This document shows, one piece after another, positions 5,983 to 18,896 of a stretch of DNA of 64,000 nucleotides. The position numbers and the translations under genes were made by a program. Below the pieces are notes generated by a model that searched no databases, was not told where the DNA came from, and saw only the letters and a list, made by a program, of their open reading frames with translations. How positions within the stretch are numbered: the first letter of the stretch is position 1; each line of letters opens with the position of its first letter. The stretch is taken from the IMG/VR virus record IMGVR_UViG_3300027770_001980, positions 1-64,000 of that record. The stretch is one strand, 5' to 3'.

Positions 5983-6040
5983 AGGATAGCAACAGCAAAC
6001 TCAAAAATTTCAATGTTTATGAAACCAAAATGCTATCCTG
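5983..6040 (+). ncRNA. CAGCAA-handle RNA E1
   Basis: AGGATAGCA/TGCTATCCT helix, ACAGCAAA, hairpin TTTCA-atGTTta-TGAAA. Confidence 0.7.
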
Positions 6041-6049
6041 TTTTATTAT

Positions 6050-6124
6050 ACTCCGGTCGTCTAGTGGCTAGGACGCCAGCCTTTCAAGTTGGAGAAGCGG
6101 GATCGAAACCCGTTCGGAGTACCA
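6050..6124 (+). tRNA. tRNA-Glu(TTC)
   Basis: CCAGC-ctTTCaa-GTTGG; variant T-loop ATCGAAA. Confidence 0.88.
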
Positions 6125-6132
6125 AGTTTTAT

Positions 6133-6210
6133 CTGTGTGTGAGAAAGTCTGGTTAATCTACTCGCCTTGGAAGTGAGAAATCGTAGGTTCAAATCCTACC
6201 ACACAGACCA
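6133..6210 (+). tRNA. tRNA-Pro(TGG)
   Basis: CTCGC-ctTGGaa-GTGAG, CCA. Confidence 0.88.
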
Positions 6211-6215
6211 TATAT

Positions 6216-6290
6216 GCCGTTGTAGTCCTCTGGGAGGGCACTGGATTGTCTATCCAATTAAGGCGGGTTCGATTCCCGTCGACGGCGCCA
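6216..6290 (+). tRNA. tRNA-Asp(GTC), copy 2
   Basis: TGGA-ttGTCta-TCCA, CCA. Confidence 0.88.
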
Positions 6291-6297
6291 AGTTTAT

Positions 6298-6373
6298 GTC
6301 CCATTCATCTAGAGGCCTAGGATAGTACCCTTTCACGGTATTCACAGCGGTTCGAATCCGCTATGGGACGCCA
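6298..6373 (+). tRNA. tRNA-Glu(TTC), copy 2
   Basis: GTACC-ctTTCac-GGTAT, CCA. Confidence 0.9.
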
Positions 6374-6380
6374 AGTTTAT

Positions 6381-6451
6381 GCGCTGGATTGACATTGCGA
6401 GTTGGATTTGAAGCCAAACGCAGACAGGTTTGATTCCTGTCAGGTGCACCA
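6381..6451 (+). pseudogene. degenerate tRNA-like gene, anticodon unclear
   Basis: ACCA end, T-arm CAGG-TTTGATT-CCTG, 8-nt loop ATTTGAAG, poor D-arm. Confidence 0.55.
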
Positions 6452-6458
6452 AGTTTAT

Positions 6459-6535
6459 GCGTGGTTAGCTCAGTTTGGTAGAGCATCGGGTTGCCAACTC
6501 GAAGGTCGCAGGTTCGAACCCTGTACCCCGCACCA
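6459..6535 (+). tRNA. tRNA-Gly(GCC)
   Basis: TCGGG-ttGCCaa-CTCGA, CCA. Confidence 0.9.
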
Positions 6536-6544
6536 AAAATTTAT

Positions 6545-6622
6545 GTCTAGGTGGCGGAGTGGCCCAACGCGACAGTCTGCAAAACTGTAACACCGTCGGT
6601 TCAAATCCGACCCTAGATTCCA
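6545..6622 (+). tRNA. tRNA-Cys(GCA)
   Basis: ACAGT-ctGCAaa-ACTGT, TCCA. Confidence 0.9.
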
Positions 6623-6626
6623 ATAT

Positions 6627-6703
6627 GCGTGGTTAGTGTTTAACGGCGAGCACGGTTGGCTTCCACCCAGCAAGAAGGAGTTCGAATCTCCTACCCCGCA
6701 CCA
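6627..6703 (+). tRNA. tRNA-Gly(TCC)
   Basis: GTTGG-ctTCCac-CCAGC, CCA. Confidence 0.88.
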
Positions 6704-6707
6704 AGTT

Positions 6708-6902
6708 TTGTAAGTGTCAGCAAGAGAAAGACTCGCTAGGAAGATTCTTCGAAGGTCGACCCAGTGTAAAAGTAGATCCGGTTCGAATCCGGCTTGGCTA
6801 CGGAGCGTCTATGTCGAGTATCCCGAGTGACTTACCTCCTCCCGTCCGGACTTGCATGAATCGGGTGAATGGTTGCGATTACAGAGGTGCAACTACTTAC
6901 AA
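6708..6902 (+). ncRNA. large CAGCAA-handle RNA E2 (~195 nt)
   Basis: TTGTAAGTG/TACTTACAA closing helix, TCAGCAAG, internal T-arm CCGG-TTCGAAT-CCGG. Confidence 0.6.
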
Positions 6903-6906
6903 ATTC

Positions 6907-7069
6907 AATAAGTAAGAATCAAGTGGAAAGCAAGAGCCACAAAGTAAATAGTAGACTATCATGCTACCGCGGTAGTCTTTGCAGTGTATACTGCGTCGGT
7001 AAAGTGTAACAGCGGAATCGAGAAACACTGGGGTAAGAGTCCCAACGTAGCGGTAAGCAGAAATTTATT
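6907..7069 (+). ncRNA. unassigned structured RNA
   Basis: AATAAGT/ATTTATT closure; AGACTATC/GGTAGTCT, GCAGT/ACTGC and GGG-GTAAGAGT-CCC hairpins. Confidence 0.45.
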
Positions 7070-7144
7070 CCGCAGTAGCTCAGTCGGTAGAGTAGTTGAC
7101 TGTTAATCAATTGGTCCCTGGTTCGAGCCCAGGCTGTGGAGCCA
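7069..7144 (+). tRNA. tRNA-Asn(GTT)
   Basis: GTTGA-ctGTTaa-TCAAT, GCCA. Confidence 0.92.
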
Positions 7145-7150
7145 AGTTTA

Positions 7151-7211
7151 AGGATGCTAACCGCAAATTTATACTCTGAACTTTTAATTCAACCAGTAAA
7201 AATGCATCCTG
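7151..7211 (+). ncRNA. CAGCAA-handle RNA E3
   Basis: AGGATGC/GCATCCT helix, ACCGCAAA, hairpin TGAA-ctTTTaa-TTCA. Confidence 0.7.
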
Positions 7212-7222
7212 TTTTATTTTGT

Positions 7223-7298
7223 TGGGGTGTCGCCTAGTGGCCTAAGGCAACGGTCTTTGAAATCGTCATCATGAGTTCGAATCTCATCTCCCCTGCCA
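7223..7298 (+). tRNA. tRNA-Gln(TTG)
   Basis: ACGGT-ctTTGaa-ATCGT, GCCA; acceptor stem has mismatches. Confidence 0.82.
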
Positions 7299-7317
7299 AA
7301 CATATTAGGAGAATGCA

Positions 7318-7446
7318 ATGGCTCACAAGCAACAAGGTATTCTAACAAAGAGTCCCCAATGGTGGAAGCACCTCAAGGACTGGAAACGTGTGTTCTGGAA
7401 ATCAGAACGCCAAGCACAGAAACGTAACATTAAACAAGGAGAATGA
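7318..7446 (+). CDS. small Trp/Lys-rich protein (42 aa)
   Basis: AGGAG RBS; MAHKQQGILTKSPQWWKHLKDWKRVFWKSERQAQKRNIKQGE*. Confidence 0.6.
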   Translation: MAHKQQGILTKSPQWWKHLKDWKRVFWKSERQAQKRNIKQGE

Positions 7447-7537
7447 CATGAAACGTTCAGGTAAACGATAGTGTCAATCTTAGATCCCGTATATGGTCTA
7501 GGGTTGGCACATTAAAGACAATTTAATATGCAATCAA

Positions 7538-7611
7538 CCCTCACAAACATTAAGGTGATGTAACCGGCTCTTAACCGGTAAAACACGGATCGTTACCGTG
7601 GTGTGGGACCA
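7538..7611 (+). tRNA. tRNA-Lys(CTT)
   Basis: ACCGG-ctCTTaa-CCGGT; variant T-loop ATCGTTA. Confidence 0.8.
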
Positions 7612-7617
7612 ATATAT

Positions 7618-7691
7618 GGGATCGTAACTTAAAAGTAAAGTATCGGACTTTTAATCCGACTAAGAAGGGGCAGTACCTTCCGGTCTCACCA
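7618..7691 (+). tRNA. tRNA-Lys(TTT)
   Basis: TCGGA-ctTTTaa-TCCGA; variant T-loop GGCAGTA. Confidence 0.82.
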
Positions 7692-7770
7692 TATAAAAAC
7701 ACATTGTCCTAGGCTGTGACCTAGTCCATCAGAAGTCCTTTGAGACAGAAACAATGTGTTTCTATATGGT
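7689..7770 (+). repeat. inverted-repeat-bracketed cassette B2
   Basis: CCATATAAAAACACATTGT / ACAATGTGTTCTCTATATGG; cargo hairpin CTAGG-CTGTGA-CCTAG. Confidence 0.75.
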
Positions 7771-7910
7771 AAAGAAGAAGCCGACATGGAAAGGTAGTGC
7801 AAAGGTATACAGTTGGTCTGGTTCGAAACAGAGTAAACTGATTGTATAATGAGCGTAGCACAACCCGCATCGCACGGGTAGTTAGTGGGTTCGATTCCCA
7901 TCTTTGTTAT
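7767..7910 (+). ncRNA. unassigned structured RNA with two T-loop mimics
   Basis: TCTG-GTTCGAAA-CAGA, ACCCG-catcgca-CGGGT, GTGGG-TTCGATT-CCCAT. Confidence 0.45.
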
Positions 7911-8025
7911 CATACATGAACACATTCAACGGTAAACAGGATACCTGGCAACTGGACGCAGGGGCTATCCCGAAGATGTAGGGCACTACCACCGTAAAGT
8001 CAGGAAATGAGTGTGTTCCTATATG
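7911..8025 (+). repeat. inverted-repeat-bracketed cassette B3
   Basis: CATACATGAACACATTCA / TGAGTGTGTTCCTATATG; inner ACGGT/ACCGT helix. Confidence 0.7.
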
Positions 8026-8100
8026 GTGTCTTTAGTGTAGTGGCCTGCACCCTGCTCTGTGAAAGCGGTAGTACCGGATCGATACCGGTAAGGCACCCCA
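8025..8100 (+). tRNA. tRNA-His(GTG)
   Basis: G-1 and C73, CTGCT-ctGTGaa-AGCGG. Confidence 0.88.
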
Positions 8101-8143
8101 ATATTTATTGTAGAGCATAAATACATTTATAAGGTGCTCTGCA

Positions 8144-8527
8144 ATGTTAAACTCAATATGTAAAAATTGTTCAAAAGAATTTATTAAAGGTCGAAATACA
8201 ACAGGGACATACTGTTCACTACCTTGCACTTTTGAATCTCAAAAAAAAGAAAGAAGAGAAAATTTCTTAGAAGGAAAAATGGTTAACCGTGGATTAATGA
8301 AACAACATATGGTTGATATTCACAGTTGGCAATGTATGTGTTGTAAAAACACTGAATGGTTAGGAGTGCCAATTCCGTTGGAGTTGGATCACATTGATGG
8401 TAATGCAGGAGACAATCGACCTGAAAATTTGCGATTGCTATGTCCAAACTGCCATGCACAGACTCCAACACATAAAGCAAAGAATAAAGGCAATGGCCGC
8501 GGGAGTCGCGGATTGCCCTGGTATTAA
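8144..8527 (+). CDS. HNH endonuclease
   Basis: LELDHIDGNAGDNRPENLRLLCPNCHAQT with Cys pairs. Confidence 0.85.
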   Translation: MLNSICKNCSKEFIKGRNTTGTYCSLPCTFESQKKERRENFLEGKMVNRGLMKQHMVDIHSWQCMCCKNTEWLGVPIPLELDHIDGNAGDNRPENLRLLCPNCHAQTPTHKAKNKGNGRGSRGLPWY

Positions 8528-8529
8528 TT

Positions 8530-8603
8530 CCTCTTGTAGTTAAATGGTATAACGGCCTCTTGATAAGTGGTTATTACAAGTTCGATTCTTGTCGAGAGGA
8601 CCA
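8530..8603 (+). tRNA. tRNA-Ile(GAT)
   Basis: ttGATaa loop, ACCA. Confidence 0.85.
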
Positions 8604-8610
8604 AGTTTAC

Positions 8611-8685
8611 GCCTGGTTAGTTCAGCGGAAGAACGTCTGCCCGATTAGCGGAATGTTGTAGGTTCGACTCCTACACCGGGTACCA
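8611..8685 (+). tRNA. tRNA-Ile(GAT)-like with variant loop
   Basis: TCTGC-ccGATta-GCGGA (C33, U37); otherwise a normal cloverleaf. Confidence 0.7.
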
Positions 8686-8692
8686 AATCAAT

Positions 8693-8767
8693 GCGCCCGT
8701 AGTATAATGGATAATACACTAGGCTACGAACTTAGGAATGGTGGTTCGATTCCATCCGGGCGCACCA
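8693..8767 (+). tRNA. tRNA-Arg(ACG)
   Basis: CTAGG-ctACGaa-CTTAG. Confidence 0.9.
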
Positions 8768-8775
8768 ATAGTTAA

Positions 8776-8865
8776 GGAAGCGTGGCAGAGCCCGGCTTAT
8801 TGCAGCAGTCTTGAAAACTGCCGACCCGAAAGGGTCCGTGAGTTCGAATCTCACCGCTTCCGCCA
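8776..8865 (+). tRNA. tRNA-Ser(TGA)
   Basis: GCAGT-ctTGAaa-ACTGC, long variable arm. Confidence 0.92.
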
Positions 8866-8882
8866 ATACAATAAATAAGTCT

Positions 8883-9626
8883 ATGCGAATACATGAACTT
8901 ATTGTAGAAACTACTGAGGAAGATCGTGCTATCATTAGCCTTGCTGATGTTATCTATAAGGATCTACAGCAATATGCTGATACAGAATTAGACTACGATG
9001 AAACAGGTGTGATGCACATTGGACGCATCGGTGATCTGTTTGATACTCCGATTCCCGGACTTGATCGCGTGAGATTAGAAATATCTTCAGATGAGTCCAT
9101 AGTGGATCTGGCACGTAGACTTCACGGTAAGGCTACACCGTCAGATAGTCATTTTGGACAATGGGATCCTATGGAGAAGGCGATATCTTTAAATGCTGAT
9201 TACTTGAGCTCTAATCGTATGCGTAGTGTCATAGCACATGAATTAAGACATGCCATGGACGATATGAAATCGTTGAATAGGGCTAACCAAAGTACACGAT
9301 ATCGTACAGCAAGGAAGCCCGAGCATCAAGCAGATAAAGATGGTGCTTATCAAGCACAACCTGCAGAAATCAATGCTAGGTTTATCGAAGCGTTGAATGT
9401 GTTAGTGCCCGTCATACCAAAGTTGGCAAATTTAGAACCTGCTGCATTTAGAACAAAGATGACAGCATATATAAACAAAGCATTTGAACTTAAAGACATC
9501 GCAGATTATTATCCAGAAAAGACAGCAAGTCCACACTATAAGAGATTGCTGCAACGAGCATGGGCTTTTATTGAAAAAGAGCTGGCTCACATACGATCAC
9601 AAACAGTTGACACAGCGGCGGAATAA
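8883..9626 (+). CDS. putative Zn metallopeptidase-like protein
   Basis: HExxH (AHELRH) plus downstream EINA; start moved to MRIHEL because the track start lies inside the tRNA. Confidence 0.55.
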   Translation: MRIHELIVETTEEDRAIISLADVIYKDLQQYADTELDYDETGVMHIGRIGDLFDTPIPGLDRVRLEISSDESIVDLARRLHGKATPSDSHFGQWDPMEKAISLNADYLSSNRMRSVIAHELRHAMDDMKSLNRANQSTRYRTARKPEHQADKDGAYQAQPAEINARFIEALNVLVPVIPKLANLEPAAFRTKMTAYINKAFELKDIADYYPEKTASPHYKRLLQRAWAFIEKELAHIRSQTVDTAAE

Positions 9627-9635
9627 GTATATAAT
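9607..9635 (+). promoter_or_regulatory. sigma70 promoter (internal to array)
   Basis: TTGACA-17-TATAAT. Confidence 0.8.
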
Positions 9636-9641
9636 ATACTT

Positions 9642-9750
9642 GCGACCGTGAGTGGAACATGGCAGACCTCCGGACCGGGGATTCTCGGCGAGGGATGGGG
9701 CGAAGTCTTAGACACAGCCTTTGTAGGTTCAAACCCTACCGGTCGTACCA
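9642..9750 (+). ncRNA. Leu-type tRNA-like RNA with expanded central domain (109 nt)
   Basis: GCGACCG/CGGTCGT acceptor + ACCA, Leu-like D-loop, T-arm; no canonical anticodon arm. Confidence 0.6.
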
Positions 9751-9762
9751 GTTAAGAATTAA

Positions 9763-9851
9763 GGAATGGTCCCATAATGGTATTGGAGCAGATTGCTAAT
9801 CTGTCGGTCGTTTAATACGGCTTCCGAGTTCGAGTCTCGGTCATTCCGCCA
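9763..9851 (+). tRNA. tRNA-Ser(GCT)
   Basis: GCAGA-ttGCTaa-TCTGT, long variable arm. Confidence 0.9.
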
Positions 9852-9872
9852 AGTTGATAAAAGAAGAATTAT

Positions 9873-10670
9873 ATGATTTTAGATTGTGTTACATTTTTTA
9901 ATGAGTTAGAATTATTAGAGGGTAGATTAGAATACCTGTATGATACCGTAGACTATTTTATCATAGTTGAAAGTGATACAACTCATAGTGGTCACCCTAA
10001 ACCTTTAAACTATTTGCCTAACATACAGAGATATAAAAAATATCTGGACAAGATAATTTATTTTCCGTATCCGGCAGAAATTAAAGATCTAAATATCGAT
10101 CAAACTCTTGATAAATTTGATTACGATTCCGCACATTGGAAAATAGAGAAAAGACAAAGAAGTCATATTCTTAATGCGATAAAATTTTTCAAGGATGACG
10201 ATATAGTATTGATCAGTGATGTTGATGAGATTCCTTCTAAATCTGCTATCGAGATAGCATCCGAGCAGTTAGGAAAATCAGCAGCAGCATTTTCATTATC
10301 ACAGGATTTTTTCTTTTATAATTTTGCTCAGAGGCAAAGTTTTCCGTGGAAAGGTACTGTTGTTTCTACAAACAAATTTGTTCAACAACAAGGTCCGCAG
10401 TGGCTTCGTGATATGCGTTGGGATATTCCAACAATATTTCAAGGTGGATATCATTTGAGCTACTGGGGTGATCCAGAACGTATCGCAACTAAGATACAGA
10501 ACTTTGCACATCAGGAACTCAACAAAGAAACCTTTACAGATACCGAACGTATAAAAGAAAGAATTAAATCAGGTAACGATCCGTTTGATCGTCAACCATT
10601 GATTCCTGTAGAACCGGAATCAATTCCAAAAGACATTTATGACATATTCAACAAATATGGCAGTAGTTAA
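9873..10670 (+). CDS. GT17-family (GnT-III-like) glycosyltransferase
   Basis: FFNELELLEGRL, VESDTTHSG, SDVDEIP, GYHLSY, KIQNFAHQE. Confidence 0.8.
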   Translation: MILDCVTFFNELELLEGRLEYLYDTVDYFIIVESDTTHSGHPKPLNYLPNIQRYKKYLDKIIYFPYPAEIKDLNIDQTLDKFDYDSAHWKIEKRQRSHILNAIKFFKDDDIVLISDVDEIPSKSAIEIASEQLGKSAAAFSLSQDFFFYNFAQRQSFPWKGTVVSTNKFVQQQGPQWLRDMRWDIPTIFQGGYHLSYWGDPERIATKIQNFAHQELNKETFTDTERIKERIKSGNDPFDRQPLIPVEPESIPKDIYDIFNKYGSS

Positions 10671-10674
10671 TTTG

Positions 10675-10763
10675 TATCTCTGGTGTAATGGTATTGGAGC
10701 GGATTGCTAATCCGTCGAGTTGCGAAAGCAGCTTTCTGAGTTCGAGTCTCAGTCATTCCGCCA
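10675..10763 (+). pseudogene. chimeric tRNA-Ser(GCT) with foreign 5' end
   Basis: D-loop to CCA resembles the 9763 Ser; 5' TATCTCT cannot pair with 3' TCATTCC. Confidence 0.7.
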
Positions 10764-10770
10764 AATAAAT

Positions 10771-10847
10771 GAGTCAGTAGTTCCAATTGGCAGAACGTTG
10801 GTCTCCAAAACCAAATGTTGTAGGTTCAAATCCTACCTGGCTCGCCA
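10771..10847 (+). tRNA. tRNA-Trp(CCA)
   Basis: TTGGT-ctCCAaa-ACCAA. Confidence 0.92.
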
Positions 10848-10871
10848 AACAAAGATAGTAAATAATAGTAT

Positions 10872-10945
10872 GCGGGTATGATGTAAAGGTAACCTGAAAC
10901 CTTGCCAAGGTTTATTTGAGAGTTCGATTCTCTCTACCCGCTCCA
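10872..10945 (+). tRNA. tRNA-Gly(GCC), copy 2
   Basis: AAACC-ttGCCaa-GGTTT. Confidence 0.9.
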
Positions 10946-10949
10946 AATA

Positions 10950-11045
10950 GGCCGGACCTGTATCCATATTCCGGCTCCGCTGACGCGAAAACAGGATGGG
11001 CTGCGCTCACGGGGTTTGATTGTTTCCCGACACAACAATAACAAT
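10950..11045 (+). ncRNA. unassigned pseudoknot-forming RNA
   Basis: GCCGGA/TCCGGC stem whose loop CCTGT can pair with ACAGG (10991-95). Confidence 0.4.
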
Positions 11046-11059
11046 CACCAAACATATGG

Positions 11060-11104
11060 CCTCACCCTCTAGCAACATAGTTCTACGGTGAGGTTTTCTT
11101 TTTT
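11060..11104 (+). terminator. terminator-like hairpin inside array
   Basis: CCTCACC/GGTGAGG with a long loop, followed by a T-rich tract. Confidence 0.45.
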
Positions 11105-11165: not shown

Positions 11166-11174
11166 TTTTATTAT

Positions 11175-13775: not shown

Positions 13776-13790
13776 TTTAGTAGAAAATGT

Positions 13791-14429
13791 ATGTATCAAA
13801 AACTAACAAACTGTAAGCATTGTAATATCTCTTTAGAGAGTATGAATGCCAACGAAAGGGCAAACCATTCGAGATGGTGTACATCAAACCCTAAACGGGT
13901 TGAATATGTAAATGCGCTGGCCAAGCATAGAGAAAATATTGTCGCTCCTCGAAATCAATTTGTTAAAGCAAAAGACGAGGGACGACCTGTTCCAAAAGGA
14001 ACAATGACCGGAAAACCCGGAACGATGTTAGGTAAGAAACATTCTCTGGAAACAAAGCAACATCTTAAAGAAAAAGCGTTAGCAAGCCCACATAGAAGAT
14101 TAGTTAGGTCCATTAGAAAATATACACAAAAGGATGGAACTATTGTTAATTTAGATTCTTCTTGGGAAGAAGCATTGGCAATTCGCCTTGATGAACTTAA
14201 TGTTAATTGGATCCGACCCAAGCCGATAAAATGGATAGATGACAATGGTATAACCCATAACTATTTTCCAGACTTTTATCTTGTTGATTTCGACGTATAT
14301 TTAGATCCAAAAAATCCTTATGCTATTAAGGCACAGGAAAGCAAAATAAAATGTTTGACAAAACAGATAAAAAATCTTATAATCATAAGAGGATTAGAAG
14401 AGTGTAAAAATTATACCCCTATAGTTTAA
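13791..14429 (+). CDS. putative homing endonuclease (NUMOD3-like repeat + PD-(D/E)xK domain)
   Basis: GKKHSLETKQHL; DSSWE...YFPDFYL...YLDPKN. Confidence 0.7.
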   Translation: MYQKLTNCKHCNISLESMNANERANHSRWCTSNPKRVEYVNALAKHRENIVAPRNQFVKAKDEGRPVPKGTMTGKPGTMLGKKHSLETKQHLKEKALASPHRRLVRSIRKYTQKDGTIVNLDSSWEEALAIRLDELNVNWIRPKPIKWIDDNGITHNYFPDFYLVDFDVYLDPKNPYAIKAQESKIKCLTKQIKNLIIIRGLEECKNYTPIV

Positions 14430-14488
14430 TGGTAAAACGGCGGATTTCTACTCCCTAAATAGCAGTTCGATTCTGTTACGCCGGACCA
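14415..14488 (+). pseudogene. chimeric tRNA: foreign 5' half + 3' half of Arg(TCT)
   Basis: 3' TCTAC-TCCCT...ACGCCGG-ACCA complements 13648-13680, not the adjacent ACCCCTAT...GGCGGATT. Confidence 0.75.
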
Positions 14489-14499
14489 AAGATTTTATT

Positions 14500-14589
14500 G
14501 CGAGCGAGACTTGGAGTCCGAGGGGTCTTATATGCCCTTTCCGCCAGATTAGCGGCTTTGAGAGAGTTCGATTCTCTCCGCTCGTACCA
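14500..14589 (+). tRNA. tRNA-Ile(TAT)-like with long variable arm
   Basis: GGGT-ctTATat-GCCC, short D-arm, extra CCGC-cagatta-GCGG hairpin. Confidence 0.65.
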
Positions 14590-14638
14590 CCTATCACAAT
14601 TAGGTTCTTTTGTTAAAATATCATATAATTAATATATT

Positions 14639-15340
14639 ATGAACAATGAAAAACATCAACCTATTACAGTGGTAGTGCCTACCATGTGGAGACATTCTCC
14701 ATTTTTAGATTTTGCACAGGACTTCTTAGAATTAAATGTAGTCGAACATTTAATCATCATCGACAATGATATCTCAAGAAGACCCAACCATCCGGTATTG
14801 ACCAATTCCAAAATAACTATTTTTGAATTTGGAAAAAATATATTTGTCAATCCTGCTTGGAACTTAGGAGTCAACAACAGCAAAACTAATATTGTTTGCA
14901 TATTGAATGATGATTTAAATTTTGATATCAGATTATTCAATAGAGTATCTAAGTTTATTAAACCTGATATGGGTGCAATAGGATTGAGTAACGGAATAGC
15001 AGAATTTGGACAAACAATTTTAACTGACGGAATGATCAATTTTGAACCATTTCATGGACAGATATGTGAAGGATTTGGTAATCTCATGTTTGTACATAAA
15101 TCTACATGGAAAGATATACCCGAAGGGTTGAATATCGCATATGGAGATAATTTCATTTTCGAACAAAATCTTTACAACAATCGAACAAACTATTTTATTG
15201 TTAATATGTTTCATCACCATGCAGCATCTACCACAGTTAAAGAAGTATTAAAAGATAAAGATGTGAAAGATGTTTTTTGGCTACGAGAAAGTCTTCTATA
15301 TAAAGACATCAAGGTCAAATTAATGAATAGAACATTTTAG
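14639..15340 (+). CDS. GT2-like glycosyltransferase
   Basis: VVVPTMW, IIDND, VNPAWNLG, LNDD, YGDNFI. Confidence 0.7.
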   Translation: MNNEKHQPITVVVPTMWRHSPFLDFAQDFLELNVVEHLIIIDNDISRRPNHPVLTNSKITIFEFGKNIFVNPAWNLGVNNSKTNIVCILNDDLNFDIRLFNRVSKFIKPDMGAIGLSNGIAEFGQTILTDGMINFEPFHGQICEGFGNLMFVHKSTWKDIPEGLNIAYGDNFIFEQNLYNNRTNYFIVNMFHHHAASTTVKEVLKDKDVKDVFWLRESLLYKDIKVKLMNRTF

Positions 15341-15350
15341 AAAGAATAGT

Positions 15351-15425
15351 GGGCTTTTAGCTTAATGGTAAAGCAGTCGACTCATAATCGATTGAGTGTA
15401 GGTTCAATTCCTACAAAGCCCACCA
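15351..15425 (+). tRNA. tRNA CAT (Ile2/lysidine-type or Met)
   Basis: GTCGA-ctCATaa-TCGAT; GGGC acceptor resembles Ile2. Confidence 0.82.
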
Positions 15426-15466
15426 TATCTCAAAGTTAGAGATAAATACTCTAACCGGAGCACGTA

Positions 15467-15895
15467 ATGTTAAAAGAATATACATGTAAAGATTGTGGTA
15501 AAGAAGGAAAAGAAAATTTTTATCAATATCGATATCAATGCAAATCTTGTTGGAATAAACGCACATATCAATCAAGTAGAGATAAATTAGATTTACTCAT
15601 ACACGAAAGAGGCGGAAAATGCGAAAGATGTGGATACAATAAATGCATGGATGCTTTACAGTGGCATCATATAGATCCTACAATTAAAGAGTTTGGAATA
15701 AGCAAACAACGAGGTGCATCGATAGAAGTATTACGAAAAGAAATTGATAAGTGTTCTTTATTATGTGCAAACTGTCATGTCGAGGTACATGCAGAAATGC
15801 GAAATAAAGGATATAAAGTTGTCAGAATTACCCATCCAGAATTTAAAGAAAGATATTTTTCTGGTAAGGGATTTTTAGATTTAATGCGGGTGTGA
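15467..15895 (+). CDS. HNH endonuclease
   Basis: CERCGYNKCMDALQWHHIDP...LLCANCHVEVH. Confidence 0.85.
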   Translation: MLKEYTCKDCGKEGKENFYQYRYQCKSCWNKRTYQSSRDKLDLLIHERGGKCERCGYNKCMDALQWHHIDPTIKEFGISKQRGASIEVLRKEIDKCSLLCANCHVEVHAEMRNKGYKVVRITHPEFKERYFSGKGFLDLMRV

Positions 15896-15972
15896 TGAAA
15901 TTGGTAGACTTCCGGTCCTTAGAAGTCCGGGTTCGAAAGAGCGTGCTGGTTCGAGTCCAGTCACCCGCACCA
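15886..15972 (+). tRNA. tRNA-Leu(TAG)
   Basis: ctTAGaa loop, long variable arm. Confidence 0.85.
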
Positions 15973-15979
15973 TTATAGG

Positions 15980-16008
15980 TTGACAACTTACCTACATAGT
16001 TGTATAAT
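15980..16008 (+). promoter_or_regulatory. sigma70 promoter
   Basis: TTGACA-17-TATAAT. Confidence 0.8.
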
Positions 16009-16029
16009 TAATTTTAATAAAAGGAAAGT

Positions 16030-16206
16030 ATGAAAACAACTGCAACATTTCGATTGAATAAGCGTTTCAAAACACTTATCTCTGCTATGCCATTTAAGAG
16101 CCAAGAACAACGTGACCATTTTCGTCACATGATGATCGAGGCACAGGTAGCAGCAAATACCATTGTCAAGAGTTCTAAGGACCGTAACAACAACCGAGGT
16201 GAATAA
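16030..16206 (+). CDS. hypothetical protein (58 aa)
   Basis: AAGGA RBS; MKTTATFRLNKRFK...RGE*; coupled to rpoZ. Confidence 0.65.
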   Translation: MKTTATFRLNKRFKTLISAMPFKSQEQRDHFRHMMIEAQVAANTIVKSSKDRNNNRGE

Positions 16207-16430
16207 TGAAAACTCCAGATTTTGTTAACAGTCTTGACACCGACAAGTGTGTGTCTAACATTGGTAGCCGATTTGATTTAGTTATTGTTGCTGCTATTCG
16301 TGCCCGCGAGTTGAATCGTGGTCATAGAAAAATGGTCAATAGTCCAAATGGTAATATTGTTAGTGCTCTGCAAGAAATCGAAGCAGGACACATTGGGCGT
16401 GATTACTTGCGAAAGGTTCGTCGACCATGA
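16206..16430 (+). CDS. rpoZ: RNA polymerase omega subunit homolog
   Basis: SRFDLVIVAAIRAREL...IVSALQEIEAGHI matches the RpoZ family core. Confidence 0.8.
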   Translation: MKTPDFVNSLDTDKCVSNIGSRFDLVIVAAIRARELNRGHRKMVNSPNGNIVSALQEIEAGHIGRDYLRKVRRP

Positions 16431-16603
16431 GCAAAGGTTCCAGACAGCGTCCAACAGATCTAAATAAGTTTCGATCAAACTACGATGCTATCTTCCGAAA
16501 GCCTTCTCCAAAAGAAGTAGATGATGCTCAAGCAGAAGATGAAGCATTCAAGAGAGTTGAAGAACAGCAATCACAAGTTCGAGACAGTGACCAAGGCGGC
16601 TAA
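16427..16603 (+). CDS. hypothetical protein (58 aa)
   Basis: MSKGSRQRPTDLNKFRSNYDAIFRK...GG*; ATGA overlap. Confidence 0.6.
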   Translation: MSKGSRQRPTDLNKFRSNYDAIFRKPSPKEVDDAQAEDEAFKRVEEQQSQVRDSDQGG

Positions 16604-16616
16604 TAAATAGAGATGC

Positions 16617-16690
16617 GCCCTACTAGTACAATGGTAGTACACTGGTTTTGTAATCCTGTGATGGCAGTTCGATTCTGTCGTAGGGCACCA
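16617..16690 (+). tRNA. tRNA-Thr(TGT), copy 2
   Basis: ttTGTaa loop; weak anticodon stem. Confidence 0.8.
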
Positions 16691-16698
16691 AGAGATAT

Positions 16699-16772
16699 GC
16701 GGGGTTCGTAAAATGGTATTACCTTAGCCTTCCAAGCTAAAGTCAGGAGTTCGATTCTCCTACCCCGCTCCA
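16699..16772 (+). tRNA. tRNA-Gly(TCC), copy 2
   Basis: TTAGC-ctTCCaa-GCTAA. Confidence 0.92.
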
Positions 16773-17041
16773 AGTCTATGCAATATGTTTAGTGCTCTAT
16801 TACGCAGCCGTTGAGTAAACTCCGACTCTGATAACACGCCTTTAGCAAGATTACACTTGCGACATGTTACTTGTAAGTTATTGAAATCAGTGGTGCCACC
16901 TTGTGATTCTGGAATGACATGATCCATATGTATTTCAGAGTCTGACAAATCGTCATCACAATAAACACAGTAGAGGCCATCGCGTTCAATAACTCTACGG
17001 CGTAGATTTAATGGTATGCGTTCTTTTTTTTGTAGCATCAA
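16760..17041 (-). CDS. HNH endonuclease
   Basis: RDGLYCVYC...MDHVIPESQGG...NLQVTCRKCNLAKG. Confidence 0.85.
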   Translation of the reverse strand: MMLQKKERIPLNLRRRVIERDGLYCVYCDDDLSDSEIHMDHVIPESQGGTTDFNNLQVTCRKCNLAKGVLSESEFTQRLRNRALNILHRLGAG

Positions 17042-17076
17042 AAATATTTAGTAAATAGAGTTTTAATGTATTAAGA

Positions 17077-17151
17077 GCCTGGTTAGCTCAGGGGGAGAGC
17101 GGCTGCTTTACACGCAGCGGGTCGGCGGTTCGAAACCGTCACCGGGTACCA
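17077..17151 (+). tRNA. tRNA-Val(TAC)
   Basis: GCTGC-ttTACac-GCAGC. Confidence 0.92.
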
Positions 17152-17159
17152 GTTTTATT

Positions 17160-17891
17160 TTAAATCCATCTTGGATCCAATGGTAAATCTCTCAGAGAAT
17201 TATCAAAATTTCCGGGTGTATAAGAAATTTTGTTTGAATTTAAATGATGTCCAAGAATAGCTTCTGGACCAAAATCCAATACTTGTTTTTCATATTCTTC
17301 AAGATGATTTATGACATCCGAATAGATTGTCATAACATCAGAGTTTCCAAATGCAAATTGATCGTTTGACTGAGAAACCTCTCCATACCATCTATTGCCA
17401 GGCATGATAACAACTTGAGAACTTAGATCATAATTGTTGATATTTAATTCAATTGGTAATCCAATATCAGTTCGTGTTCTAATTACTGCATCATATTTAA
17501 AATTATTCTCTTGTTCGTAGTTTACTCTTAACTGATTAACCTTGTATAGATTATAATACATATTGAATATATTATCGGTACCTATACCTCGATAATCTCG
17601 AACAGGAGGCCATTGTTGAAGATGAACATCGGATATTTCAAATTTTTTAAGAAAATTGTTGTTTGGTAAATTTTCAATTATTTTGGATGTAGCCCATTCA
17701 ATGTCATAATTAATCCATTTATCGTGAGGTGGAATAATATGAGAATTTTTTATTTTTAAGTCTTCTCTGGTAGGACTGTTGGTAAGATACACAAACCAAT
17801 CTGCCTGATTGTAACCTTTTAAATTATTTAGAAAATTTCTGAGGTCGCCGGTGAATCTCGGTTCTCCAGGAAGTAGTATAGCTATTCTCAT
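17160..17891 (-). CDS. glycosyltransferase-like protein, paralog 2
   Basis: MRIAILLPGEPRFTGD...KYDAVIRTRTD...NDQFAFG. Confidence 0.6.
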   Translation of the reverse strand: MRIAILLPGEPRFTGDLRNFLNNLKGYNQADWFVYLTNSPTREDLKIKNSHIIPPHDKWINYDIEWATSKIIENLPNNNFLKKFEISDVHLQQWPPVRDYRGIGTDNIFNMYYNLYKVNQLRVNYEQENNFKYDAVIRTRTDIGLPIELNINNYDLSSQVVIMPGNRWYGEVSQSNDQFAFGNSDVMTIYSDVINHLEEYEKQVLDFGPEAILGHHLNSNKISYTPGNFDNSLRDLPLDPRWI

Positions 17892-17922
17892 AAATAATAT
17901 TTATGTTAGCATATAACGATGA

Positions 17923-18159
17923 TTGATTGATTATTTATTGGCTTTTTTTGCTATCTTCTTCACTGACATCTTTTATACATATTACTTGAAGGCTGTGCAT
18001 GAAGAGCAAACACTAAAGGCCAGTTGCTGGGCAACGATAGTCTATGTGGTTGCGGCAGTGGCAATTATAGAGTATAATAGTAATCATATGTTATTGATTC
18101 CAGCGGCAGCGGGTGCATTTTGTGGCACTTGGGTTGGAATGAAAATTAGAAAGAGATAA
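17923..18159 (+). CDS. small membrane protein
   Basis: About three hydrophobic segments. Confidence 0.6.
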   Translation: MIDYLLAFFAIFFTDIFYTYYLKAVHEEQTLKASCWATIVYVVAAVAIIEYNSNHMLLIPAAAGAFCGTWVGMKIRKR

Positions 18160-18160
18160 T

Positions 18161-18239
18161 CTCCGGTTCGCCTAACCTGGTTATGGCACCTCGTTTGGGA
18201 CGAGGAATAATGTGAGTTCGAATCCCACACTGGAGACCA
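18161..18239 (+). tRNA. tRNA-Pro(TGG), copy 2
   Basis: CCTCG-ttTGGga-CGAGG. Confidence 0.88.
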
Positions 18240-18246
18240 AAGAACA

Positions 18247-18410
18247 GCGGATAAGTTACATTATCCAGTATGAGTCGCTAAGGTAGGTACCTAATCCTTA
18301 GGGCAAGTAATAGTACACAATAGCGATGTAACAGGAAGTAGTGATCTACTCACCGGGACGGGCCTCAAAACGAATCCCACCAAGTTAACTCGCCATGGCA
18401 CACGGCGTAC
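18247..18410 (+). ncRNA. unassigned structured RNA
   Basis: GGATAA/TTATCC, TAAGG/CCTTA, AGTAG/CTACT, GGGA/TCCC and CGCC/GGCG hairpins between two tRNAs. Confidence 0.45.
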
Positions 18411-18438
18411 AATAGGACAAATTGTGTGGCACGAATAT

Positions 18439-18512
18439 TGCGGGATAGAGTAACGGTAATTCAGAAGTCTCATAAGCTTCAAATCTTGGTTCGATTCCAG
18501 GTCCCGCTTCCA
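18439..18512 (+). tRNA. tRNA-Met(CAT), possibly initiator-like
   Basis: GAAGT-ctCATaa-GCTTC; 1:72 mismatch, but lacks the GGG/CCC anticodon stem. Confidence 0.8.
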
Positions 18513-18517
18513 GTTTT

Positions 18518-18624
18518 AGGATGCATCCAGCAAACACTTTTTGCCACCAAAATCAGGCAGGCCGTGCAATTGGGCACCGTAGTTGAAATAGGGGTTCGAT
18601 TCCCGGCGATACTACAGCATCCTG
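18518..18624 (+). ncRNA. CAGCAA-handle RNA E5 with tRNA-elbow mimic
   Basis: AGGATGC/GCATCCT helix, CCAGCAAA, D-arm-like GTGC-AATTGG-GCAC, T-arm GGG-TTCGATT-CCC. Confidence 0.7.
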
Positions 18625-18639
18625 TTTTCCCAAATTGTC

Positions 18640-18668
18640 TTGACAAGACGCGAGTTTTGTTATACAAT
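18640..18668 (+). promoter_or_regulatory. sigma70 promoter for E6-E7-DUF2828
   Basis: TTGACA-17-TACAAT. Confidence 0.75.
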
Positions 18669-18700
18669 ATGTACATGTTAAGAAATTAACAGTAAGTTTT

Positions 18701-18833
18701 AGGTTAGGTACAGCAACTATTCATTACTATGGACTGCTACTTATCACATTCGGACATCAAACTCCGAATTTAAGTAGATAGAGGAGTTTCGATAAGTCTC
18801 CTCGATAAAAATAAAAAGTAGACAACTAACCTG
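18701..18833 (+). ncRNA. CAGCAA-handle RNA E6
   Basis: AGGTTAG/CTAACCT helix, ACAGCAAC; CTACTTA/TAAGTAG, ATTCGGA/TCCGAAT and GAGGAG/CTCCTC arms. Confidence 0.7.
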
Positions 18834-18841
18834 TTGAATAT

Positions 18842-18896
18842 AGAATGTTAACAGCAATCTTATATTTCATTTATATCGAAAATAAAATACATTCTG
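18842..18896 (+). ncRNA. CAGCAA-handle RNA E7
   Basis: AGAATGT/ACATTCT helix, ACAGCAAT, TTTC-a-ttTATat-c-GAAA; ends about 15 nt before the DUF2828 ATG. Confidence 0.65.

What the first reader, a model, noticed from the sequence alone, without database searches (positions are those of the whole stretch)
5983..18896. Small CAGCAA RNAs each present one anticodon-loop mimic (possible anticodon-nuclease decoys)
Seen: the ~55-60 nt members contain a single hairpin with a 7-nt loop and U at position 33. E3 has TGAA-ctTTTaa-TTCA, identical to the Lys(UUU) loop at 7618. E4 has CTTTT-ctTGAac-AAAAG (Ser UGA), E1 has TTTCA-atGTTta-TGAAA (Asn GUU), and E7 has tt-TAT-at, which is weaker (closing mismatch) but matches the phage Ile(UAU) loop. 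Known: PrrC and PARIS AriB target tRNA-Lys(UUU), and colicin E5 targets GUN anticodons; isolated anticodon stem-loops can be substrates. Inference: these are non-aminoacylated decoys or sensors for tRNA-cleaving defences.
Basis: partly seen in the sequence, partly recalled or inferred. Interest (0 to 1): 0.8.

Follow-up and report, generated by a model that had tools for sequence, protein, structure and literature searches.

The report
Phage Y-like RNAs displaying anticodon-arm mimics
A giant freshwater phage carries, inside its 41-gene tRNA array, a family of small structured RNAs that share a conserved stem plus ACAGCAA signature, sit next to a Ro60-like ring-protein gene, and in their short versions each display a copy of one tRNA anticodon arm; this looks like a new, modular kind of Y RNA that may protect or police tRNAs during infection.

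Summary
E1 (5983-6039), E3 (7151-7210) and E4 (11105-11164) each have a covarying terminal stem, an unpaired ACAGCAA-type motif and one 4-5 bp hairpin with a 7-nt loop (AUGUUUA, CUUUUAA, CUUGAAC). Among 155 unique short relatives, 86 carry a CU-NNN-AA loop on a stem of at least 4 bp (shuffles 1.9, max 7). The loops match those of real phage tRNAs, and positions 34-36 change between near-identical orthologues. The same scaffold frames two longer RNAs (18518-18623, 18701-18832) and E7 (18842-18895), which lie directly upstream of ORF 18911-20326. That ORF's predicted fold matches Ro60/TROVE plus vWA (top six PDB hits). In relatives the long members are permuted tRNA-like RNAs that align full-length to Rfam YrlA below threshold. 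E7 abuts the Shine-Dalgarno and is conserved with compensatory changes, so it is probably an autoregulatory operator. Best reading: a Y-RNA-like family for a phage Ro60-like protein with interchangeable tRNA-part modules. The anticodon-nuclease bait role is plausible but untested. The scaffold also resembles Dictyostelium Class I RNAs below threshold. Verdict: a new variant of a known kind, of high interest.

The parts
5650..18512 (+). Array of 41 tRNA genes, all on the + strand, in which the small RNAs are embedded
   Evidence: ARAGORN and Rfam tRNA hits. There are six perfect TTGACA-17-TATAAT promoter-like sites on the + strand.
5983..6039 (+). E1, a short scaffold RNA. Its stem is AGGATAGCA/TGCTATCCT, followed by ACAGCAA. 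The hairpin is 6008-6024 with loop ATGTTTA (GUU at 34-36, but A32 and U37). The tail GTTTTATT is at 6040-6047.
   Evidence: Sequence. Fold z-score -3.4. CM R1 72 bits. Orthologue loops are AUGUUUA, ACGUUUA, ACGUUAA, CUUUUAA, CUGUAAA, CUGUUAA and CUGCAAA.
7151..7210 (+). E3, a short scaffold RNA. Its stem is AGGATGC/GCATCCT, with motif AACCGCAA. The hairpin is 7177-7191 with loop CTTTTAA, which equals the Lys(UUU) anticodon loop.
   Evidence: Sequence. Fold z-score -3.0. CM R1 62.9 bits. In the E3-like group, C32 is 35/36, U33 36/36, U36 36/36 and A37 35/36, while position 35 takes all four bases.
11105..11164 (+). E4, a short scaffold RNA. Its stem is AGGATAGCA/TGCTATCCT, followed by ACAGCAA. 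The hairpin is 11132-11148 with loop CTTGAAC (UGA at 34-36).
   Evidence: Sequence. CM R1 88.1 bits. Orthologues with the same stem carry CUUGAAA, CUGUAAA and CUCGAAA.
18518..18623 (+). Longer member with the same ends (AGGATGC...GCATCCT, CCAGCAA). Its interior contains a T-arm-like hairpin, GGGGTTCGATTCCC.
   Evidence: Sequence and scaffold scan. There is no Rfam hit in this copy.
18640..18668 (+). Promoter-like site TTGACA-17-TACAAT upstream of the next two members and the Ro60-like gene
   Evidence: Consensus scan, 11 of 12 matches. This is a pattern match only.
18701..18832 (+). Large member (AGGTTAGGT-ACAGCAA...AACTAACCT-GTT). It is the syntenic RNA found just upstream of the Ro60-like gene in relatives.
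   Evidence: Sequence. In 55 of 66 relatives with enough upstream DNA, a member ends 78-355 nt before the gene.
18842..18895 (+). E7, a scaffold element in the 5' UTR. Its arms are AGAATGT/ACATTCT with ACAGCAA. It is followed by G and the Shine-Dalgarno AAAGG (18897-18901), 15 nt before the ATG.
   Evidence: It is conserved in 49 of 50 unique upstream regions, with compensatory arm changes AGAATGC/GCATTCT, AGGTTAT/ATAACCT and TGAATGC/GCATTCA. It gives a full-length sub-threshold hit to Rfam RF01414.
18911..20326 (+). 471-aa Ro60-like protein (Pfam DUF2828 + DUF7788): a helical-repeat ring plus a vWA domain with a DxSxS MIDAS motif
   Evidence: Pfam. AF2 pLDDT 90.6. The Foldseek top six PDB hits are all Ro60/TROVE, probability 1.0. 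D277, S279 and S281 are invariant. Mycobacteriophage homologues are annotated 'Ro-like RNA binding protein'.
7618..7688 (+). The phage's own tRNA-Lys(UUU), whose anticodon loop CTTTTAA is copied in E3. The counterparts for E1 and E4 are tRNA-Asn(GUU) at 7069-7144 and tRNA-Ser(UGA) at 8776-8865.
   Evidence: Rfam tRNA, ARAGORN and sequence.

Best explanation
The 'CAGCAA RNAs' are a phage family of Y-RNA-like small RNAs. They are probably the partners of the Ro60-like ring protein encoded at 18911-20326.

SHOWN:
- Every member has a terminal helix joining its 5' and 3' ends. The helix covaries and is followed on the 5' side by an unpaired (A)CAGCAA motif and on the 3' side by GUU.
- Members lie on the tRNA strand, in tRNA-like slots of the array and directly upstream of the Ro60-like gene.
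- Between the two scaffold halves sits an exchangeable module. In short members (E1, E3, E4) it is a 4-5 bp / 7-nt hairpin whose loop copies a tRNA anticodon loop. In long relatives it is a circularly permuted T-arm / acceptor hairpin / D-arm, as in YrlA.
- One member (E7) is fused to the ribosome-binding site of the Ro60-like gene.

INFERRED:
- The RNAs are co-transcribed with the tRNAs and cut out at the same AU-rich spacers.
- The helix plus ACAGCAA is the docking site for the Ro60-like protein. This parallels the terminal helix plus CGAA/GNCGAA bulge of known Y RNAs.
- Binding of the protein at E7 represses its own translation.
- The module decides what the RNP touches. Short members offer a non-chargeable anticodon arm (Lys UUU, Ser UGA, Asn GUU here) to proteins that read anticodon loops.

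Most likely use (about 0.3 on its own): bait, competitive inhibitor or sentinel for host anticodon-directed defence nucleases, as part of the phage's protection of its tRNA pool.
For: Scaffold as a real structured RNA:
- With only the outer 3 bp, the motif and GTT used as anchors, 286 of 395 unique instances pair at all four variable stem positions (49 expected with permuted partners). There are 27 compensatory 4-mer combinations.
- On a CM alignment, 85.3% of cells are paired against 68.9% in shuffles (0/500). The covariation score is 0.346, against 0.120 for shuffles and at most 0.081 for slid controls.

Link to the Ro60-like gene:
- In 55 of 66 loci a member ends 78-355 nt upstream on the same strand.
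- 65 of 80 protein-fetched loci contain members.
- 30 of 109 RNA-fetched loci with a true element contain the gene within about 9 kb, against 0 of 115 chance-match loci.
- The protein fold matches Ro60 and has a MIDAS motif. Profile search of PDB sequences puts Ro60/TROVE chains in the top four, though weakly (E 0.03-0.09).

Y-RNA architecture:
- L032:4002-4117 aligns to all 114 positions of Rfam YrlA, with T, AS and D arms in YrlA order.
- Published Y-like RNAs are a 5'-3' stem flanking a bulge with a conserved CGAA motif (PMC4201824, PMC12135203).
- E7 conservation and covariation at the SD.

Anticodon-arm mimicry.

Generality:
- The same ACAGCAA scaffold occurs four times in the tRNA array next to the Ro-like gene of coliphage garuso.
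- A Lys-loop member lies about 100 nt upstream of the gene in Synechococcus phage BUCT-ZZ01.

Counter-defence precedent: the Ro60-like gp130 of Felixounavirus Bas63, located upstream of its tRNAs, counters the Ppl defence system (PMC11482910).
Against: - No binding, expression or processing data exist. RNA-library contigs only show that related sequence is present in lake metatranscriptomes.
- The conserved motif is ACAGCAA, not the GNCGAA/CGAA of known Y RNAs.
- No member reaches an Rfam gathering score (best YrlA score 34.7 against 69).
- The window's own long members give no YrlA hit.
- Pfam TROVE itself is not matched by the protein.
- E1, E3 and E4 lie 7.7-13 kb from the gene, further than the 4 kb typical for YrlA.
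- About a third of short members have other loops (AUUGG-type, 9-nt loops, GCUAA...UAGC hairpins), so 'one anticodon mimic each' is not universal.
- Ppl, the only defence shown to be countered by a homologue, is not known to cut tRNA.
- Mimic anticodons coincide with the phage's own tRNAs only slightly more often than permuted sets do (111 against 101 +/- 5).
Confidence: 0.6

Rival explanations
1. These are free-standing anticodon-nuclease decoys or sensors. The hairpins soak up or report PrrC-, AriB- or colicin-type nucleases on their own, and the scaffold serves only for stability and excision.
For: The loops equal real anticodon loops, and positions 34-36 turn over between close relatives. 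Lys UUU is the commonest mimic (30 of 103) and, from general knowledge, a frequent nuclease target. The elements lack CCA and T/D arms.
Against: The scaffold is the most conserved part, it is shared with non-ASL members, and it is tightly syntenic with the Ro60-like gene, including a copy on that gene's RBS. A mere stabilising stem would not need an invariant unpaired ACAGCAA. No nuclease data exist.
Confidence: 0.12
2. The elements are tethers for tRNA maturation or quality control. The anticodon-arm module recruits an anticodon-reading host enzyme (a modification enzyme or a synthetase) or the RNP's own clients. This would let the Ro60-like ring inspect, stabilise or degrade phage tRNAs, with no role against defence nucleases.
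For: In bacteria, Y RNAs tether Ro60 to other proteins and carry tRNA-like modules that tRNA enzymes recognise (PMC4201824). The phage makes 41 tRNAs. The mimics are dominated by U36-A37-A38 and A36-A37-A38 loops, which from general knowledge are the contexts of position-37 modifications. The mimicked anticodons are ones the phage itself encodes.
Against: The AU-rich composition alone favours U/A at position 36. The rapid switching of 34-36 between near-identical orthologues fits conflict better than housekeeping. A homologous protein acts as a counter-defence factor.
Confidence: 0.15
3. The elements are U-turn 'kissing' regulators. The YUNR-type 7-nt loops would be fast RNA-RNA recognition loops that pair with short complementary sequences in target RNAs, and the likeness to anticodon loops would be structural convergence.
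For: From general knowledge of antisense RNAs, 7-nt loops with U at the second position and a purine three bases on form U-turns. The variable triplet is displayed like a recognition loop.
Against: The whole heptamer, including C32, A37 and A38, equals real tRNA loops. A34 is avoided as in tRNAs. Three to five variable bases give little specificity. Other members carry T/D-arm mimics, which points to tRNA mimicry as the theme.
Confidence: 0.05
4. The elements are non-functional remnants or punctuation: decayed tRNA genes, processing spacers or terminators of the tRNA operons.
For: They occupy tRNA-like slots between AU-rich spacers. The stem is followed by GTTTTATT in E1, E3 and E4.
Against: Compensatory evolution occurs in two helices across hundreds of copies. 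The motif is invariant. The tail is only GUU in most relatives (GTTGAAT, GTTAGTC and others). No terminator-like call was made at any member.
Confidence: 0.04

Closest known systems
Bacterial and phage Y RNAs (YrlA/YrlB, Yrl1/Yrl2) with Ro60/Rsr (Rfam RF02553; PMC4201824; PMC12135203)
   Same: - They are encoded next to, and on the same strand as, a Ro60-fold protein.
- The 5' and 3' ends form a helix that flanks an unpaired conserved motif.
- They have a variable effector module.
- Long members carry a permuted T-arm / acceptor hairpin / D-arm.
- There are several RNAs per locus.
   Different: - The motif is ACAGCAA rather than GNCGAA/CGAA.
- The protein is the divergent DUF2828/DUF7788 clade and gives no Pfam TROVE hit.
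- Copies are scattered through a 13-kb tRNA array.
- Short members carry an anticodon arm, which is the one tRNA part that YrlA lacks.
- One copy is fused to the gene's RBS.
- All Rfam scores are below threshold.
Dictyostelium Class I RNAs (Rfam RF01414; PMC7919456)
   Same: - They are 42-65 nt long.
- A short covarying terminal stem starts GAU... and ends ...AUC followed by UG(U).
- A conserved motif ending ACAGCAA lies directly after the 5' stem.
- The interior is variable and they are AU-rich.
- Five phage elements give full-length hits of 20.8-29.4 bits to this one model out of 4227.
   Different: - They are eukaryotic, nuclear-encoded with a DUSE promoter, and reported as unique to dictyostelids.
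- The known direct binder is an RRM protein (CIBP/Rnp1A).
- The phage scores are below the gathering score of 41.5, and E1 scores only 16 bits.
- No anticodon-like module has been described in them.
- Homology and convergence cannot be told apart here.
Phage-encoded tRNAs that escape anticodon nucleases (van den Berg 2023, as cited in PMC11482910; T5 tRNA-Lys versus PARIS, PMC12409363)
   Same: They are phage tRNA-array products whose anticodon loops are the interface with host defence. Lys(UUU) is prominent.
   Different: Those are complete, chargeable tRNAs that replace cleaved host tRNAs. The elements here have no acceptor end, D arm or T arm and cannot decode.
Bas63 gp130, a Ro60-like counter-defence protein of Felixounavirus (PMC11482910)
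   Same: It is a Ro60-like protein gene adjoining the phage tRNA array. The garuso homologue (38% identity to the window protein) is followed by four ACAGCAA-scaffold RNAs. The preprint's authors guessed that some 'tRNAs' there are Y RNAs.
   Different: Orthology of gp130 to the garuso gene is inferred from genus and position, not checked. The Felixounavirus short members do not show clear anticodon loops. The countered system (Ppl) is not known to target tRNA.

Membership tests
Y RNA / YrlA (RF02553) | Encoded close to, and on the same strand as, a Ro60 orthologue | tested here: met
   Y-T, Y-L and E7 lie 15-393 nt upstream of the ORF. 55 of 66 relatives show the same arrangement. E1, E3 and E4 are 7.7-13 kb away but share the scaffold.
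Y RNA / YrlA (RF02553) | Helix formed by the 5' and 3' ends, flanking an unpaired conserved protein-binding motif (GNCGAA / CGAA) | tested here: inconclusive
   The helix with compensatory changes is met. An unpaired conserved motif is present, but it reads ACAGCAA, not GNCGAA.
Y RNA / YrlA (RF02553) | tRNA-like module with T arm, acceptor-like hairpin and D arm | tested here: not met
   It is absent from E1, E3, E4 and E7. It is present in long relatives (L032, L058, L075, L051) and in garuso. The window's 18518-18623 member has only a T-arm-like hairpin.
Y RNA / YrlA (RF02553) | Rfam gathering score (69 bits) | tested here: not met
   The best score is 34.7 bits for L032. The window's members give no hit.
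Y RNA / YrlA (RF02553) | Bound and stabilised by the Ro60 protein | not testable with these tools
   This needs EMSA, RIP or CLIP.
Ro60 / TROVE protein | Ring of helical repeats plus a C-terminal vWA domain with a MIDAS motif | tested here: met
   The AF2 model has pLDDT 90.6 and pTM 0.89. The top six Foldseek PDB hits are Ro60/TROVE over about 510-566 aligned columns, TM 0.41-0.59. DxSxS is invariant.
Ro60 / TROVE protein | Sequence match to Pfam TROVE or to solved Ro60 chains | tested here: not met
   Pfam gives only DUF2828 and DUF7788. The single sequence finds no Ro60 in the PDB. The family profile puts Ro60/TROVE chains in the top four, but at E 0.03-0.09.
Dictyostelium Class I RNA (RF01414) | About 60-nt RNA with a short covarying terminal stem and a conserved motif next to the 5' stem | tested here: met
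   Members are 47-67 nt with a 7-9 bp covarying stem, and ACAGCAA lies directly after it.
Dictyostelium Class I RNA (RF01414) | Rfam gathering score (41.5 bits) | tested here: not met
   Scores are 16 bits (E1), 20.8 (E7), 25.5 and 27.1 (L127) and 29.4 twice (L258).
Dictyostelium Class I RNA (RF01414) | Dictyostelid nuclear gene with an upstream DUSE element | tested here: not met
   The element is in a phage contig, transcribed from sigma-70-like promoters within a tRNA array.
tRNA | Cloverleaf with acceptor stem/CCA, D arm and T arm | tested here: not met
   Neither ARAGORN nor Rfam calls a tRNA at E1, E3, E4 or E7. The 3' side is GUU, not CCA.
tRNA | Anticodon arm: 5-bp stem and a 7-nt loop with Y32, U33 and R37 | tested here: met
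   E3 and E4 meet it fully. E1 does so only partly (A32, U37). 103 of 155 relatives meet it.
Intrinsic terminator | GC-rich hairpin followed by a U run | tested here: not met
   No terminator-like call falls at any member. The tails in relatives are GUU followed by varied bases.

The most novel reading that the evidence does not exclude
The ACAGCAA-scaffold RNAs are one ancient family that pairs with DUF2828-type Ro60-like proteins in phages and in eukaryotes. Under this reading, the functionally unexplained Class I RNAs of dictyostelid amoebae are their cousins. The phage short members are programmable anticodon-arm baits: the scaffold loads them on the Ro-like ring, and the exchangeable triplet sets which anticodon-directed defence nuclease is trapped or sensed.
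Probability: 0.12. Interest if true: 0.92.

Novelty: new variant of a known kind. Interest (0 to 1): 0.78.

Why it matters
Y RNAs are known to carry a tRNA 'elbow' mimic, but what the module is for remains open. Here the same scaffold carries either the elbow or the anticodon arm. The anticodon triplet is swapped between near-identical phages, which turns the question into simple experiments such as loop swaps, binding assays and plating on defence-armed hosts.

The work also gives a likely RNA partner and a likely binding motif to DUF2828/DUF7788. This is a very large family of phage proteins: 6146 clusters at 50% identity, and 711 cultured-phage records, including Felix O1-like, T4-like, Listeria, Staphylococcus and Campylobacter phages. 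One member of the family is already reported to defeat a bacterial defence system.

If the resemblance to Dictyostelium Class I RNAs reflects common descent or a shared protein partner, it would offer the first mechanistic lead for those RNAs.

Tried and rejected
- Rfam at a permissive threshold on 5000-20000 found only tRNAs at first. The YrlA and Class I resemblances appeared only in relatives or in small search spaces.
- Megablast of the Ro-like region against GenBank phages found nothing. Single-sequence phmmer against the PDB found nothing relevant.
- My first fold of E7 started two bases too late, which made it look unstructured. This was corrected with relatives.
- MFE folding and a 'longest stem' rule mis-assign hairpins in these AU-rich RNAs. 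I replaced them with explicit 7-nt-loop and flank-pairing tests with controls.
- A first test of the closing stem assumed 8 contiguous pairs and seemed to fail, because many helices are 7 bp. It was redone in the proper register.
- The regex grouping of 'E4-like' members was contaminated by alternative readings of E1-like hairpins, so only the E3-like group is quoted.
- RNA-library contigs gave presence only. They gave no ends or strand.
- Testing whether mimic anticodons match the phage's own tRNAs gave a weak signal.
- The terminator reading was rejected.
- A literature search for DUF2828 and for DDB_G0281243, an uncharacterised Class I RNA-associated protein, gave nothing usable. I could not determine whether dictyostelids encode a DUF2828 protein.
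- The CAGCAA sites at 6668, 6718, 13277 and 13602 and those inside ORFs have no closing stem and are not members.

Full report
WHAT IS THERE

The window is the first 64 kb of a 221-kb IMG/VR contig from lake water. It is a jumbo phage. It has 41 tRNA genes on the + strand between 5650 and 18512. These are driven by several perfect TTGACA-17-TATAAT promoter-like sites.

E1 (5983-6039), E3 (7151-7210) and E4 (11105-11164) share five features:
- a 7-9 bp helix joining the two ends (AGGAT.../...ATCCT);
- an unpaired (A)C(A/C)GCAA directly after the 5' arm;
- one internal hairpin;
- an A-rich 3' linker;
- GTT after the 3' arm.

A scan for this scaffold finds three more members in the window:
- 18518-18623, whose interior has a T-arm-like hairpin;
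- 18701-18832, a 132-nt member;
- E7 at 18842-18895, which I first misjudged because I folded it from 18845.

Other CAGCAA occurrences have no closing stem.

THE OBSERVATION

The four hairpins are as described.
- E3's loop CTTTTAA is identical to that of the phage tRNA-Lys(UUU) at 7618-7688.
- E4's CTTGAAC differs from the phage tRNA-Ser(UGA) loop only at position 38.
- E1's ATGTTTA keeps GUU but has A32 and U37.
- E7 has a closing mismatch.

To judge chance I collected relatives in three ways:
- 80 loci through the neighbouring protein;
- about 220 loci through two exact scaffold patterns that do not include the loop;
- cultured phages.

The results on 155 unique short members were as follows.
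- 86 have a stem of at least 4 bp closing a CU-NNN-AA loop (1.9 +/- 1.25 in dinucleotide shuffles, max 7). 103 have YU-NNN-R-N (10.3 +/- 2.8, max 20).
- A test that does not presuppose a stem gives the same answer. CTNNNAA heptamers inside members are flanked by at least 4 of 5 pairs in 70% of cases. The figure is 9.2% in the rest of the same loci and 83% in the 2890 real tRNAs found there.
- Position 34 almost never holds A (2 of 77), as in real tRNAs.
- The heptamers are the same as those of real phage tRNAs with that anticodon, while the stems are different and AU-rich.
- Near-identical orthologues differ mainly in the triplet. E4-type copies carry UGA, GUA or CGA on an unchanged CTTTT/AAAAG stem. 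The E3-type group has C32, U33, U36, A37 and A38 essentially fixed, with all four bases at position 35.
- U33 is not absolute. C33 occurs in E1's lineage.
- About a third of short members carry other loops, such as AUUGG-type loops, 9-nt loops and a GCUAA...UAGC hairpin.

The sequences are not all independent, because many are close orthologues.

The ORF starting 15 nt after E7 (18911-20326) matches Pfam DUF2828 and DUF7788. Its family is very large, with 6146 clusters at 50% identity.

An AlphaFold model built on 60 homologues is confident (pLDDT 90.6). Its six best matches in the PDB are all Ro60/TROVE proteins over the full length. They are Xenopus and human Ro60, Deinococcus Rsr, and Thermus phage phiLo Ro60.

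The vWA MIDAS motif DxSxS is invariant. Homologues in mycobacteriophages are annotated 'Ro-like RNA binding protein'. Sequence-level matches to TROVE are absent or marginal.

Ro60 proteins work with Y RNAs. Published Y-like RNAs have a 5'-3' stem flanking a bulge with a conserved CGAA/GNCGAA motif, are encoded beside the gene, and in bacteria often carry a permuted tRNA-like module (PMC4201824; PMC12135203). The phage family fits this architecture point by point, apart from the motif sequence.
- The terminal helix shows abundant compensatory change. 286 of 395 instances are fully paired at four unconstrained positions, against 49 with permuted partners, in 27 combinations. Covariation is 0.346, against 0.120 for shuffles and at most 0.081 for slid controls.
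- Long relatives contain a T arm, an acceptor-like hairpin and a D arm in YrlA order. They align to all 114 positions of Rfam YrlA at 34.7 bits, below the gathering score.
- In 55 of 66 relatives a member ends 78-355 nt upstream of the gene.
- Among loci fetched by RNA pattern alone, 30 of 109 with a true element contain the gene within about 9 kb, against 0 of 115 chance matches. Loci with elements hold a median of 15 tRNAs, against 0.

E7

In 49 of 50 distinct upstream regions the gene is preceded by AGAATGT-TA-ACAGCAA...ACATTCT-G(T)-AAAGG. The last block is the Shine-Dalgarno.

The arms change in a compensatory way: AGAATGC/GCATTCT, AGGTTAT/ATAACCT, TGAATGC/GCATTCA and AGGTTAA/TTAACCT.

A copy of the presumed binding site fused to the protein's own ribosome-binding site is the classic layout of translational autoregulation by an RNA-binding protein. 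This is inference. It is also independent support that the scaffold is what the protein recognises.

HOW IT MOST LIKELY WORKS

Shown: a covarying scaffold, its synteny with a Ro60-fold gene, and exchangeable tRNA-part modules that include faithful anticodon-arm copies.

Inferred:
- The RNAs are co-transcribed with the tRNAs and excised at the same AU-rich spacers.
- They dock on the Ro60-like ring through the helix plus ACAGCAA.
- The module determines the RNP's contacts.

For the short members the module is a non-chargeable anticodon arm. It can only be meaningful to proteins that read anticodon loops.

I favour host anticodon-directed defence nucleases as the target, with the RNA acting as bait, inhibitor or sentinel. 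There are three reasons, none of them proof:
- The triplet turns over quickly on an otherwise fixed RNA.
- Lys(UUU) is the commonest mimic.
- The Ro60-like gp130 of Felixounavirus Bas63, which sits next to that phage's tRNAs, has been reported to counter the Ppl defence system (PMC11482910).

The main rival is a housekeeping role in maturation or surveillance of the phage's own tRNAs.

I put the Y-like identity at about 0.75, functional anticodon-arm mimicry at about 0.7, and the nuclease-bait role at about 0.3.

BREADTH

The same signature occurs in several cultured phages.
- Coliphage garuso has it four times in the tRNA array directly after the Ro-like (vWFA) gene, as AGACCnnn-ACAGCAA...nnnGGTCT-GGT. 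One of these copies has T, acceptor and D arms.
- Synechococcus phage BUCT-ZZ01 has a short member with a Lys-like loop (CTTTTAC) about 100 nt upstream of the gene.
- Aeromonas phage Ahp1 has a candidate with ACTGCAA, and Vibrio phage nt-1 also has a candidate.

These phages offer tractable test systems.

AN UNEXPECTED RESEMBLANCE

Rfam's model of Dictyostelium Class I RNAs (RF01414) has the consensus stem GAUCUC/GAGAUC, then CUUACAGCAA, and a 3' UG. It gives full-length sub-threshold hits to E7 (20.8 bits) and to four short members in relatives (25.5-29.4 bits). E1 scores only 16 bits.

Class I RNAs are 42-65 nt with a short covarying terminal stem, a conserved motif next to the 5' stem and a variable interior. 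Their function is unknown, and they were reported as unique to dictyostelids (PMC7919456).

Repeated hits to one model out of 4227, always on independently defined elements and in the right orientation, are unlikely to be random. Convergence and homology cannot be separated here, however. I could not establish whether dictyostelids have a DUF2828 protein.

VERDICT

The elements are not members of YrlA, Class I RNA or tRNA by the curated thresholds. They work like Y RNAs and are best filed as a new variant of that kind.

Noticed in passing
window 18842-18895; L127:263-315 and 456-510 (minus strand); L258:1936-1996 and 3243-3297 (minus strand): These elements give full-length sub-threshold hits (20.8-29.4 bits, gathering score 41.5) to Rfam RF01414, the Dictyostelium Class I RNA model. 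That family shares the size, the terminal stem GAU.../...AUC, the ACAGCAA motif after the 5' stem and the UG(U) 3' end.
   Followed up: partly
window 5045, 5136 and 13277: CAGCAA also lies 12-16 nt downstream of the -10 box of three strong promoter-like sites (5001-5029, 5096-5124, 13237-13265), in the shared context CATA-N(1-3)-CAGCAA. None of the three has a closing stem. This could be a leader signal or a second kind of binding site.
   Followed up: no
window 7688-7770, 12779-12885 and 13410-13520: A second repeat family is present. It consists of 20-25 nt inverted repeats (ACCATATAAAAACACATTGT / ACAATGTGTTTCTATATGGT type) that start at the CCA end of tRNA genes. The copy at 12779-12885 is flanked by an exact 30-nt duplication of the tRNA-Val 3' end (12758-12787 = 12876-12905), like a target-site duplication.
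   Followed up: partly
window 6380-6450, 6704-6800, 7788-7909, 12264-12378 and 14422-14477: These are degenerate or interrupted tRNA-like sequences with T-arm motifs. Rfam tRNA hits are weak or very long (27-39 bits), and ARAGORN does not call them. They may be pseudo-tRNAs, intron-containing tRNAs or further tRNA-like RNAs.
   Followed up: no
window 8144-8527, 13743-14429 and 15467-15895: Small ORFs are interspersed in the tRNA array. By eye, the one at 8144-8527 and probably the one at 15467-15895 have HNH-type endonuclease motifs, as in the tRNA regions of Felix O1-like phages (garuso_99). The array also holds glycosyltransferase-like ORFs (9873-10670, Pfam GT17) and an RNA polymerase omega/Rpb6-like ORF (16206-16430).
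   Followed up: partly
L093, minus strand, element starting at 1010 (91 nt): One member holds a D-like hairpin, an anticodon arm with a Phe-type loop (CTGAAAA) and a T arm in normal tRNA order. The ACAGCAA scaffold stands in place of the acceptor stem. This suggests the modules are captured from tRNA genes.
   Followed up: no
L307:8705-9702 (Escherichia phage garuso); L308:14837-14897, 8494-8568 and 5723-5787 (Synechococcus phage BUCT-ZZ01); L306:891-1013 (Aeromonas phage Ahp1): Cultured phages with a DUF2828 Ro-like gene carry unannotated ACAGCAA-scaffold RNAs in or beside their tRNA arrays. The BUCT-ZZ01 copy next to the gene has a Lys-like 7-nt loop.
   Followed up: partly
window 20600-21193, 21761-22222 and 29012-29815: Downstream of the Ro-like gene lie three ORFs: a 2OG-Fe(II) oxygenase, an AAA_33 P-loop kinase (the fold class of polynucleotide kinases) and a GTP cyclohydrolase I. 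No RNA ligase was seen among the ORFs scanned.
   Followed up: no
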